Assembly: GCF_046119375.1 (NCBI RefSeq)
Contig: NW_027362772.1
Location: 72,850,001 to 72,914,000, forward strand
Reading direction: 5' to 3'
Origin: Phyllobates terribilis
Lineage: Eukaryota
Length of the DNA stretch: 64,000 nucleotides
Shown here: piece by piece, positions 33,442-34,632 of the stretch
Layout: each line of letters opens with the position of its first letter
Numbering within the stretch: position 1 is the first letter of the stretch
Notes under the pieces: generated by a model
Seen by the model: the letters and a program-made list of their open reading frames with translations, nothing else
Database searches by the model: none
Told to the model about the DNA's origin: nothing
Program-made: the position numbers and the translations under genes

Positions 33442-34632
33442 ATGCTCGCTCGGAAGGGGCTGATCCATGATGAATTCTTGTTAACCCGAATTGCAGAAGA
33501 TAAGGATAACCATCCTCAATTTAAGACCAAGACTAGGAAAGCACGATTCGTGTCCAAAAACGGTGCTTGCAACGTGGCCCATAAGAATATTCGAGAGCAG
33601 GGACGTTTCCTCCAGGATGTGTTCACCACCATGGTGGACCTGAAGTGGCAACATAGCTTATTTATCTTCACGATGACATTCATCTGCAGCTGGATGCTGT
33701 TCGCCATGGCCTGGTGGCTTATCGCCTTCGCCCATGGAGATCTAGACCCCAAGCGCAGCTCTTCTATACCATGCGTCACTAACATCCAGTCTTTCACTTC
33801 TGCATTTCTCTTCTCCATCGAGGTCCAGGTGACCATTGGATTTGGAGGTCGTATGGTCACTGAGCAATGCCCACTGGCCATAACAGTCCTCATCATTCAG
33901 AACATATCTGGCTTAATCATCAATGCTGTCATGTTGGGTTGCATCTTCATGAAGACAGCACAGGCAAACCGGAGAGCGGAGACCCTAATCTTCAGTAAGC
34001 ATGCCGTCATAGCCTGCCGGGATGGCAAATATCGCTTTATGTTCCGAGTTGGTGACCTACGCAAGAGTATGATTATCAGCGCTTCAATCAAAATTCAAGT
34101 AGTCAAGAAGACCACAACCAATGAGGGAGAGGTCATTCCAATTTCTCAGGTTGATATCCAGGTGGAGAACCCAGTTGGGGCAAATTCCATTTTTTTAGTC
34201 TCCCCTCTTATTATAAGCCATACGATTGATGAGAAGAGTCCTCTTTTCCATTTTTCGGCCTACGACCTCGGCGACCAAGATCTGGAGGTGGTAGCAATCC
34301 TTGAAGGAGTAGTAGAGACCACCGGGATAACTACTCAGGCGAGGACTTCCTACTTGACCGACGAAATCCTGTGGGGCCGTCGTTTTGTTCCGATTGTGAC
34401 GGAAGAAGAAGGTCGCTATTCTGTGGACTACTCCAAATTTGGAAAAACAGTGAAAATACACGGACCCCAGTGTAGCGCTAAAGACCTGATGGAAGGCAGG
34501 TATAATCTAATTTCCAGGGGTCAACCTTCTAGATCCGCGAAGAAAAGGAAAGGTGACAGCCAACAAGCTTCACTACTAGAAAAGAAAATGGCCACATATG
34601 CACATCCTAATGATTCTTCATCTGATTCCTAA
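33442..34632 (+). CDS. ATP-sensitive inward rectifier K+ channel, Kir6 family (KCNJ11-like; probable Kir6.3/kcnj11l), 396 aa, intronless CDS
   Basis: MLARKG..., [29 protein letters not shown] (the Kir6-specific GFG filter), [50 protein letters not shown]; ATG in ACCATG context. Family certain, orthology inferred. Confidence 0.97.

What the first reader, a model, noticed from the sequence alone, without database searches (positions are those of the whole stretch)
34546..34554. RKR ER-retention motif reads RKG: possibly a SUR-independent KATP pore
Seen: counting without gaps from the conserved C-terminal Cys (CSAKDL, human CTARQL), positions +25 to +27 are R-K-G (agg aaa ggt), where human Kir6.2 has R369-K370-R371. 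No other RxR lies in the tail. Established: the RKR motif holds Kir6.1 and Kir6.2 in the ER unless SUR co-assembles; mutating or truncating it lets Kir6.2 reach the surface alone. ATP-site residues are kept (N48, R50, E179, I182, K185, R201, Y330, G334 equivalents). Inference: a natural ATP-inhibited channel that traffics without SUR, and so would not respond to sulfonylureas or MgADP in that form.
Basis: partly seen in the sequence, partly recalled or inferred. Interest (0 to 1): 0.72.

Follow-up and report, generated by a model that had tools for sequence, protein, structure and literature searches.

The report
Frog Kir6.3 channel lacking RKR motif
A poison-frog-like genome carries an intact, transcribed third KATP pore gene (Kir6.3) whose usual "stay in the ER until SUR joins" signal reads KKRK instead of RKR, but this is an old trait of nearly all frogs and a salamander, and the rest of the protein still looks built to work with SUR.

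Summary
Window 34546-34554 encodes R369-K370-G371. This lies 25-27 residues after Cys344 of an intact 396-aa Kir6 ORF (33442-34632, +). No R-x-R occurs anywhere in the protein. Four sequencing runs from four studies, including a second species, show the same codons, so it is not an error.

The interpretation needs correcting.
- **Paralog.** The gene is not a Kir6.2 ortholog. It is the third paralog, Kir6.3 (kcnj11-like), which groups with coelacanth, shark and teleost kcnj11l.
- **Register.** The homologous register is K367-K368-R369 against the ancestral R-K-R, which caecilians and coelacanth keep. The first Arg became Lys. The third Arg did not become Gly.
- **Age.** The change is shared by all 26 frog and salamander orthologs examined, and only two of them have regained an R-x-R. 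The four-residue basic cluster stays basic in 103 of 104 cells, inside a fast-evolving disordered tail.
- **SUR coupling.** The SUR-binding N-terminal peptide, M1 helix, Q52 equivalent, ATP site and di-acidic exit motif are all conserved.
- **Precedent.** Mixed Lys/Arg motifs (TASK KRR/KRRK) are known COPI retention signals. From memory, zebrafish Kir6.3 also lacks RKR yet needs SUR1.

SUR-independent trafficking is therefore possible but not the favoured reading. The same scan had already noted this gene as a third Kir6 (s1-204901).

The parts
33391..33441 (+). 5' untranslated start of the coding exon, after a 16-T tract and the predicted acceptor AG at 33389-33390. It contains a short upstream ORF (ATG 33391, stop 33415-33417).
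   Evidence: Sequence. Transcript-like contigs of runs X1, X5 and X14 match from 33396 onward and carry 65-125 unmatched 5' letters. They have zero depth at 33169-33335, where DNA run X13 has depth. The exact junction is hidden by the tool's masked repeat at 33361-33395.
33442..34632 (+). Complete single-exon coding sequence of a Kir6.3 (kcnj11-like) KATP pore subunit, 396 aa plus stop.
   Evidence: ORF. Pfam IRK 4e-57 and IRK_C 1.5e-65. PDB Kir6.2 585 bits and Kir6.1 570 bits. Placed in the Kir6.3 clade.
33442..33501 (+). Codons 1-20, [20 protein letters not shown], equivalent to the Kir6.2 N-terminal peptide that binds SUR.
   Evidence: Near-identical across all three Kir6 paralogs. Mean pairwise identity is 0.82 among 26 batrachian Kir6.3, against 0.48 for residues 21-32.
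34540..34551 (+). Basic cluster K367-K368-R369-K370, the remnant of the ancestral RKR(R) retention signal.
   Evidence: The columns are K25/R1, K19/R7, R25/K1 and K17/R8/Q1 in 26 batrachians. Caecilians have RKRR and coelacanth has LRKR.
34546..34554 (+).
   Evidence: Unchanged in four runs. Position 371 is variable among batrachians (G10, V10, L2, S, R, M, P).
34612..34629 (+). Conserved acidic, serine-rich C-terminal end D-S-S-S-D-S.
   Evidence: Tail alignment. Identity for residues 390-396 is 0.68, against 0.31 for residues 371-389. Function unknown.
34633..37000 (+). 3' untranslated region, at least 2.4 kb.
   Evidence: A single contig of run X1 (3784 letters) lies on 33396-37000 and runs on. 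Contigs of X5 cover the same span.

Best explanation
The window encodes an intact, transcribed ortholog of Kir6.3 (kcnj11-like). This is the third, ancient jawed-vertebrate paralog of the KATP pore subunits, lost in amniotes. The genome is from a hyloid frog very close to Ranitomeya. The ancestral tail signal R-K-R lost its first arginine to lysine before frogs and salamanders split, leaving a conserved K-[K/R]-R-[K/R] cluster in a disordered tail. The protein keeps everything needed to be ATP-inhibited and to dock onto a sulfonylurea receptor: the N-terminal peptide, M1 helix, Q52 equivalent, ATP pocket and di-acidic ER-exit motif. The most likely reading is that it still works as the pore of a SUR-containing octamer. 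Its surface delivery would be governed by assembly with SUR (whose own RKR needs a Kir6 partner to be masked), and possibly by the basic cluster acting as a weaker or non-canonical coat-binding signal. Shown: identity, paralogy, motif state, age of the change, conservation pattern, transcription. Inferred: continued SUR dependence and any function of KKRK.
For: - **Identity.** Pfam IRK and IRK_C domains; best PDB matches are Kir6.2 and Kir6.1.
- **Paralogy.** The nearest proteins are amphibian 'KCNJ11-like' (98% to Ranitomeya imitator). They are distinct from amphibian KCNJ11 (70%) and KCNJ8 (68%).
- **Tree.** The window gene sits inside an amphibian clade (SH-aLRT 99). That clade lies inside a clade with coelacanth kcnj11-like, shark and ray 11-like, and gar plus teleost kcnj11l (SH-aLRT 96), separate from Kir6.1 and Kir6.2. 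The AU test rejects fish kcnj11l joined with Kir6.2 (p 0.022) and a fish-only duplication (p 0.00017). PMC5367309 equates KCNJ11L with Kir6.3.
- **Motif survey.** An R-x-R in the tail occurs in 5 of 5 Kir6.1 and 53 of 57 Kir6.2. At the homologous site it occurs in only 4 of 28 amphibian Kir6.3 and 0 of 15 ray-finned Kir6.3.
- **Conservation.** Pairwise identity is 0.82 for residues 1-20, 0.91 for M1, and 0.31-0.59 for the tail. The cluster is basic in 103 of 104 cells.
- **Functional residues.** ATP-site, PIP2 and GFG residues are kept. E282 of the di-acidic motif is invariant (motif described in PMC5786184).
- **Tail structure.** Residues 357-396 are predicted disordered, with pLDDT below 40.
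- **Transcription and sequence accuracy.** Supported. Three of the four coding differences seen in other samples are synonymous.
- **Precedent for Lys-containing retention motifs.** TASK KRR/KRRK with an essential Lys (PMC4760375); Xenopus GIRK5 KRXY (PMC8016131); a Lys-based internal COPI motif in the delta opioid receptor (PMC6589700).
- **Role of the RKR and of SUR TMD0/M1 contacts.** PMC3047609 and PMC5344670.
Against: - No functional data exist for any amphibian Kir6.3.
- By the canonical rule for arginine-based signals (two Arg separated by one residue; my own knowledge of Zerangue 1999 and Michelsen 2005), KKRK should not retain. A share of SUR-less tetramers may therefore escape the ER.
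- The window's KKRK is not the KRR of TASK channels.
- The zebrafish precedent is cited from memory, and the zebrafish tail is unrelated in sequence to the frog tail.
- No SUR gene lies beside this gene, unlike the Kir6.1 and Kir6.2 loci.
- Short-range synteny with teleost kcnj11l is not shared.
- Conservation of the N-terminus could in principle serve gating rather than SUR binding.
Confidence: 0.6

Rival explanations
1. One reading: because the R-x-R signal is gone, frog Kir6.3 tetramers leave the ER on their own. They would form a natural SUR-less, ATP-inhibited K+ channel that is insensitive to sulfonylureas and MgADP, at least in cells without SUR.
For: No R-x-R anywhere in the protein. 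Removing the RKR of Kir6.2 gives surface channels without SUR1 that remain ATP-sensitive (PMC3047609). The ATP site is intact and the di-acidic exit motif is kept. There is no linked SUR gene. Kir6.3 lost the motif repeatedly (batrachians, ray-finned fish, several sharks), while Kir6.1 and Kir6.2 almost never did. This fits a paralog-specific relaxation of the checkpoint.
Against: The SUR-binding N-terminus and M1 are as conserved as in Kir6.1 and Kir6.2 after roughly 300 million years without the motif (the time estimate is from my own knowledge). The basic cluster is conserved rather than eroded. Lys/Arg clusters can bind COPI. Zebrafish Kir6.3 without RKR reportedly still needs SUR1 for trafficking (memory). 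Bona fide Kir6.2 of a newt and a lungfish also read KRR or KKR, so this variant coexists with an obligate SUR1 partnership. SUR-less Kir6.2 has low open probability.
Confidence: 0.2
2. The KKRK cluster is itself a working, non-canonical retention and retrieval signal of the TASK KRR(K) type. In that case the SUR checkpoint is fully preserved by a different sequence.
For: Charge conservation in 103 of 104 cells, in a predicted disordered tail, at the exact site of the old RKR. Several frogs and the salamander read KRRK, identical to the TASK-3 motif. Lys is essential in the TASK motif.
Against: The window and most hyloid frogs have only one Arg (KKRK), and no experiment shows this retains. TASK motifs sit next to a C-terminal 14-3-3 site that has no counterpart here. 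The cluster could serve another role, such as membrane or PIP2 contact or a kinase docking site.
Confidence: 0.15
3. Artefact or dead gene: the Gly codon or the whole tail is an assembly error, or the gene is a decaying pseudogene.
For: None found.
Against: The ORF is intact. Four runs from four studies, including another species, agree at the site. Spliced transcript-like contigs exist. Identity to orthologs is 84-98%. Three of the four coding differences seen in the other samples are synonymous.
Confidence: 0.01

Closest known systems
Zebrafish Kir6.3 (kcnj11l; Zhang et al. 2006, Physiol Genomics 24:290)
   Same: Same paralog clade. Lacks a canonical RKR in the tail (0 of 15 ray-finned Kir6.3 have R-x-R at the site). 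Conserved N-terminus MLARKG...TRLAED. No SUR gene next door (PMC5367309; Colossoma locus).
   Different: The fish tail is about 40 residues longer and unrelated in sequence (GWGLVRAGRGG...), with no remnant of the motif. The frog tail keeps a KKRK remnant and a DSSSDS end. Flanking genes differ: myosin V, endosulfine and a CD59-like gene in Colossoma, against an SR-rich exon and rras here. Only the fish protein has been tested functionally, and its SUR1 requirement is cited from memory.
Mammalian Kir6.2 (KCNJ11) and Kir6.1 (KCNJ8)
   Same: About 70% identity over residues 1-357. Same domains, GFG filter, ATP-site residues, N-terminal peptide, M1 and di-acidic exit motif.
   Different: Different paralog. 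The RKR at 369-371 is replaced by KKR(K). Not adjacent to a SUR gene. No Ser directly after the motif, so the PKA site of the Kir6.2 RKRS (my own knowledge) has no counterpart.
Engineered Kir6.2 deltaC26/deltaC36 and RKR-to-AAA (Tucker 1997; Zerangue 1999, as summarised in PMC3047609)
   Same: A Kir6 pore without a canonical R-x-R signal and with an intact ATP site.
   Different: Those are truncations or alanine replacements. Here the tail is full length and the site remains strongly basic and conserved.
TASK-1/TASK-3 KRR(K) COPI-dependent retention motif (PMC4760375)
   Same: A mixed Lys/Arg basic cluster in a disordered K+ channel C-terminus. Some frog Kir6.3 read KRRK, exactly as TASK-3 does.
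   Different: The window reads KKRK. It is not at the extreme C-terminus and has no adjacent 14-3-3 mode III site. It is untested.

Membership tests
Kir6 (KATP pore-forming inward rectifier) | IRK transmembrane and IRK_C cytoplasmic domains, with closest similarity to Kir6.x | tested here: met
   Pfam E 4e-57 and 1.5e-65. Kir6.2 585 bits and Kir6.1 570 bits, against 391 bits or less for other Kir.
Kir6 (KATP pore-forming inward rectifier) | G-F-G selectivity filter and ATP-pocket residues (N48, R50, I182, K185, R201, L205, Y330, F333, G334 equivalents) | tested here: met
   All present. Pocket residues as listed in PMC5344670.
Kir6 (KATP pore-forming inward rectifier) | Conserved N-terminal peptide and M1 helix that contact SUR | tested here: met
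   Alignment. Identity 0.82 and 0.91 among batrachian orthologs.
Kir6 (KATP pore-forming inward rectifier) | R-K-R (R-x-R) ER-retention signal in the C-terminal tail | tested here: not met
   No R-x-R in 396 aa. The site reads KKRK.
Kir6 (KATP pore-forming inward rectifier) | Functional dependence on SUR (trafficking, MgADP and sulfonylurea response) | not testable with these tools
   Needs expression and patch-clamp experiments.
Kir6.1/Kir6.2-type locus | SUR (ABCC8/ABCC9) gene immediately upstream | tested here: not met
   No ABC Walker A, signature or Walker B motif in any frame of the 64-kb window. This is a motif-level test only.
Kir6.3 / kcnj11-like clade | Phylogenetic placement with teleost kcnj11l, apart from Kir6.1 and Kir6.2 | tested here: met
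   SH-aLRT 96 for the clade. Alternative placements rejected with p-AU 0.022 and 0.00017. This used a quick tree, and the fish stem branch is long (0.62).
Kir6.3 / kcnj11-like clade | Shared gene neighbourhood with teleost kcnj11l | tested here: not met
   Colossoma locus within 10 kb each side: myosin V, endosulfine, CD59-like. Window: SR-rich exon upstream and a ras-type G1 exon at 58461 downstream. The skate locus is empty within 10 kb.
Arginine-based ER sorting signal ([hydrophobic/R]-R-x-R) | Two arginines separated by one residue in an exposed cytosolic segment | tested here: not met
   Only one Arg in the cluster. The segment is predicted disordered, with pLDDT below 40.
TASK-type KRR COPI motif | K-R-R tripeptide with an essential Lys | tested here: not met
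   The window has K-K-R-K. KRRK occurs in five orthologs (P0004, Gastrophryne, Aquarana, Hyperolius, Pleurodeles).

The most novel reading that the evidence does not exclude
Frogs and salamanders carry a naturally R-x-R-less Kir6 pore (Kir6.3) that can reach the plasma membrane without any sulfonylurea receptor. It would give a drug-insensitive channel gated by ATP alone in some cell types. This would be a natural counterpart of the laboratory construct Kir6.2 deltaC.
Probability: 0.15. Interest if true: 0.65.

Novelty: new member of a known kind. Interest (0 to 1): 0.33.

Why it matters
The RKR checkpoint is the textbook example of stoichiometry control in a hetero-octameric channel. This survey shows that the signal is almost never lost in Kir6.1 and Kir6.2. 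In the third paralog, Kir6.3, it has been lost or softened several times, while the SUR-docking parts stay conserved. That makes amphibian Kir6.3 a cheap natural test of two questions: whether the pore-side signal is dispensable when the SUR-side signal is present, and whether a K-K-R-K cluster can substitute for R-K-R. It also corrects the published view that Kir6.3 is a zebrafish-specific duplicate of Kir6.2. It is not, on present evidence, a demonstrated new type of channel.

Tried and rejected
- **Zhang et al. 2006.** I tried to read the paper by DOI and PubMed id and searched for text describing its trafficking result. It is not held, so its SUR1 requirement is cited from memory only.
- **Michelsen 2005.** PMC1369147 is not held, so the consensus rule for Arg-based signals is also from memory.
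- **Synteny.** A test of orthology with teleost kcnj11l failed to show shared neighbours within 10 kb, and the skate locus was uninformative.
- **Structure model.** The monomer AlphaFold model is poor for the membrane part (mean pLDDT 57). I used it only for the disorder of the tail.
- **Rejected readings.**
  - Sequencing error, rejected.
  - Pseudogene, rejected.
  - A C-terminal KKxx signal, rejected because the two Lys of EKKMATY are 18-19 residues from the end.
  - A PKA site like the RKRS of Kir6.2, rejected because no Ser follows the cluster.

Full report
**What is there**

Window 33442-34632 (+) is an uninterrupted ORF of 396 codons. It carries the Pfam IRK and IRK_C domains (E 4e-57 and 1.5e-65). 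Its best solved relatives are Kir6.2 (585 bits) and Kir6.1 (570 bits), far ahead of other inward rectifiers at 391 bits or less.

The codons at 34546-34554 are AGG AAA GGT, encoding R369-K370-G371. They lie within K367-K368-R369-K370-G371. No R-x-R occurs anywhere in the protein. The equivalents of N48, R50, Q52, E179, I182, K185, R201, L205, Y330, F333 and G334, the two PIP2 arginines and the GFG filter are all present.

**Not an error, and transcribed**

Twenty public runs from eight studies hold the stretch or part of it. I laid four of them on 32000-37000.
- All four cover the tail codons with no difference there. One is a DNA run independent of the likely source sample, and one is from a second species.
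- Three small runs (about 100-120 million letters each) carry long contigs that match continuously from 33396 to 37000.
- Those contigs bear 65-125 unmatched letters at their 5' ends. They leave 33169-33335 at zero depth, whereas the DNA run covers it.
- This is what a spliced transcript looks like. It fits the 16-T tract and the AG at 33389-33390 just upstream of the exon.
- The exact junction is hidden by the tool's masked repeat at 33361-33395.

The 3' UTR is at least 2.4 kb. Of four coding differences seen in the other samples, three are synonymous.

**Which Kir6 it is**

The nearest proteins are amphibian entries annotated 'KCNJ11-like': Ranitomeya imitator at 98%, other hyloids at about 90%, Xenopus at 82%, caecilians at about 77%. 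The same amphibian groups also have a separate KCNJ11 (Bufo, 70%) and KCNJ8 (Phyllobates, 68%).

A 60-protein maximum-likelihood tree places the window gene in the amphibian clade (SH-aLRT 99). That clade sits inside a clade (SH-aLRT 96) that also holds coelacanth 'kcnj11, like', shark and ray '11-like', and gar plus teleost kcnj11l. Kir6.1, Kir6.2 and the lamprey gene are on the other side. AU tests reject joining fish kcnj11l with Kir6.2 (p 0.022) and reject a ray-finned-fish-only duplication (p 0.00017). PMC5367309 equates KCNJ11L with Kir6.3 and calls it unique to zebrafish, and the tree contradicts that uniqueness.

Two caveats apply.
- The tree is a 'quick' one and the fish stem branch is long.
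- Local synteny is not shared. A Colossoma kcnj11l locus is flanked by myosin V, endosulfine and a CD59-like gene. The window has an SR-rich 1250-aa exon at 8609-12361 (-) and a ras-type G1 exon at 58461 (+).

No ABC-transporter motif occurs in any frame of the window. Unlike Kir6.1 and Kir6.2, this gene has no SUR gene beside it.

**History of the motif**

The 29 non-fish Kir6.3 tails align as follows.

| Group | Sequence at the site |
|---|---|
| Coelacanth | L-R-K-R |
| Two caecilians | R-K-R-R |
| Basal frogs (Ascaphus, Discoglossus, Xenopus, Rhinophrynus, Pelobates) | K-K-R-R |
| Salamander Pleurodeles | K-R-R-K |
| Most neobatrachians, including the window | K-K-R-K or K-R-R-K |

The invariant Arg (R369 here) corresponds to the third residue of the old RKR, and the first Arg became Lys. 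This is a one-base change, and it predates the frog-salamander split.

Across the 120 retrieved Kir6 proteins:
- An R-x-R in the tail is present in 5 of 5 Kir6.1 and 53 of 57 Kir6.2.
- At the homologous site it is present in 4 of 28 amphibian Kir6.3 (two caecilians, Pyxicephalus, Spea) and in none of 15 ray-finned Kir6.3.
- Several sharks and rays have lost it too.
- Three of the four Kir6.2 exceptions read K-R-R or K-K-R at the site (a newt, a lungfish, a galaxiid). The fourth is a truncated gar model.

**Is the site decaying?**

It is not. Among 26 frog and salamander orthologs, the four cluster columns are basic in 103 of 104 cells (K25/R1, K19/R7, R25/K1, K17/R8/Q1). The flanking tail is only 0.59 identical (residues 345-366) and 0.31 identical (residues 371-389). 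The tail from 357 is predicted disordered, with pLDDT below 40, so the cluster is exposed as the Kir6.2 RKR is. A second conserved element is the D-S-x-S-D-S end.

**Does the protein still look SUR-dependent?**

| Region | Mean pairwise identity among batrachian Kir6.3 |
|---|---|
| Residues 1-20 (N-terminal peptide) | 0.82 |
| Residues 21-32 (adjacent linker) | 0.48 |
| Residues 33-67 | 0.96 |
| M1 helix | 0.91 |

The first 20 residues are nearly identical across all three paralogs. In Kir6.2 this peptide binds SUR, a role I cite from my own knowledge of later cryo-EM work. M1 is the primary contact with SUR1 TMD0, and Q52 sits under ICL2 of TMD0 (PMC5344670). [quoted passage not shown] After roughly 300 million years without an R-x-R (time estimate from my own knowledge), this pattern is what continued partnership with SUR predicts. 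It is an inference, not a demonstration.

**What the literature allows**

- Both Kir6.2 and SUR1 carry RKR signals that are shielded only in the assembled complex. Deleting the Kir6.2 tail gives SUR-less, ATP-sensitive surface channels (PMC3047609).
- TASK-1 and TASK-3 use a K-R-R (K-R-R-K in TASK-3) COPI-dependent retention motif in which the Lys is essential (PMC4760375).
- Xenopus GIRK5 uses K-R-x-Y (PMC8016131).
- A Lys-based internal motif binds COPI in the delta opioid receptor (PMC6589700).

From memory, Zhang et al. 2006 reported three things about zebrafish Kir6.3. It lacks the RKR. It still needs SUR1 both for current and for reaching the plasma membrane. That dependence maps to its N-terminus. 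I could not retrieve the paper. What I could test is that ray-finned Kir6.3 tails have no R-x-R at the site and share the conserved N-terminus.

**Verdict**

The sequence observation is confirmed and is not an artefact.
- The gene is Kir6.3, not Kir6.2.
- The change is Arg to Lys at the first position, and it is ancient and clade-wide.
- The site remains a conserved basic cluster.
- The SUR-docking elements are conserved.
- The only characterised member of the paralog reportedly still needs SUR1.

I put about 0.6 on a SUR-partnered channel with a softened or replaced pore-side signal. I put about 0.2 on meaningful SUR-independent surface delivery. I put about 0.15 on KKRK being a fully competent non-canonical retention signal. 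This is a new member of a known kind, a Kir6.3 without canonical RKR. It offers a useful natural experiment but no demonstrated new mechanism.

Noticed in passing
window 33391-33417: A short upstream ORF (ATG plus 7 codons, then TAA) lies at the very start of the coding exon, 25 bases before the main ATG. The main ATG has a good context (ACC ATG C).
   Followed up: no
window 34612-34629; tails of P0001-P0028: The extreme C-terminus D-S-x-S-D-S is conserved from caecilians to frogs, and a similar S-x-S-D end occurs in rays. It is acidic and serine-rich, so it may be a casein-kinase-type phosphorylation site. Its function is unknown.
   Followed up: partly
P0096 (Lissotriton KCNJ11), P0042 (Protopterus), P0091 (Aplochiton): Three bona fide Kir6.2-clade proteins read V-K-R-R or V-K-K-R instead of R-x-R at the retention site. 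A Lys at the first position is therefore tolerated even in the paralog that pairs with SUR1.
   Followed up: partly
window 8609-12361 (-): A 1250-aa open exon, very rich in Ser, Arg, Lys and Glu (SR-protein-like). Pfam finds no domain.
   Followed up: partly
window 58461-58478 (+): An exon encoding [21 protein letters not shown], the G1 (P-loop) motif of a Ras-family GTPase.
   Followed up: partly
window 40979-41829 (-) and 7365-7697 (+): Remnants of Tc1/mariner (Sleeping Beauty-like) transposases: HTH_SB and HTH_Tnp_Tc3_2 domains, plus a DDE_3 fragment.
   Followed up: partly
window 28429-29122, 45421-48587, 53731-55328, 56449-57765: Four long tandem-repeat blocks give spurious long ORFs on both strands.
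   Followed up: no
window 32167-33168, 34839-35005, 35173-35339: Read depth in these bins is tens to many thousands of times that of the gene itself (about 13 in DNA run X13, 30-44 in X1 and X5), which marks high-copy interspersed repeats.
   Followed up: no
window about 25060-25950: A run of N (assembly gap or masked stretch).
   Followed up: no
L001 (Colossoma kcnj11l locus); P0041 and P0065: In Colossoma, kcnj11l sits between myosin V/endosulfine and a CD59-like gene. Its contig has the same length as the one carrying KCNJ11, so the two paralogs may be on one chromosome there.
   Followed up: no
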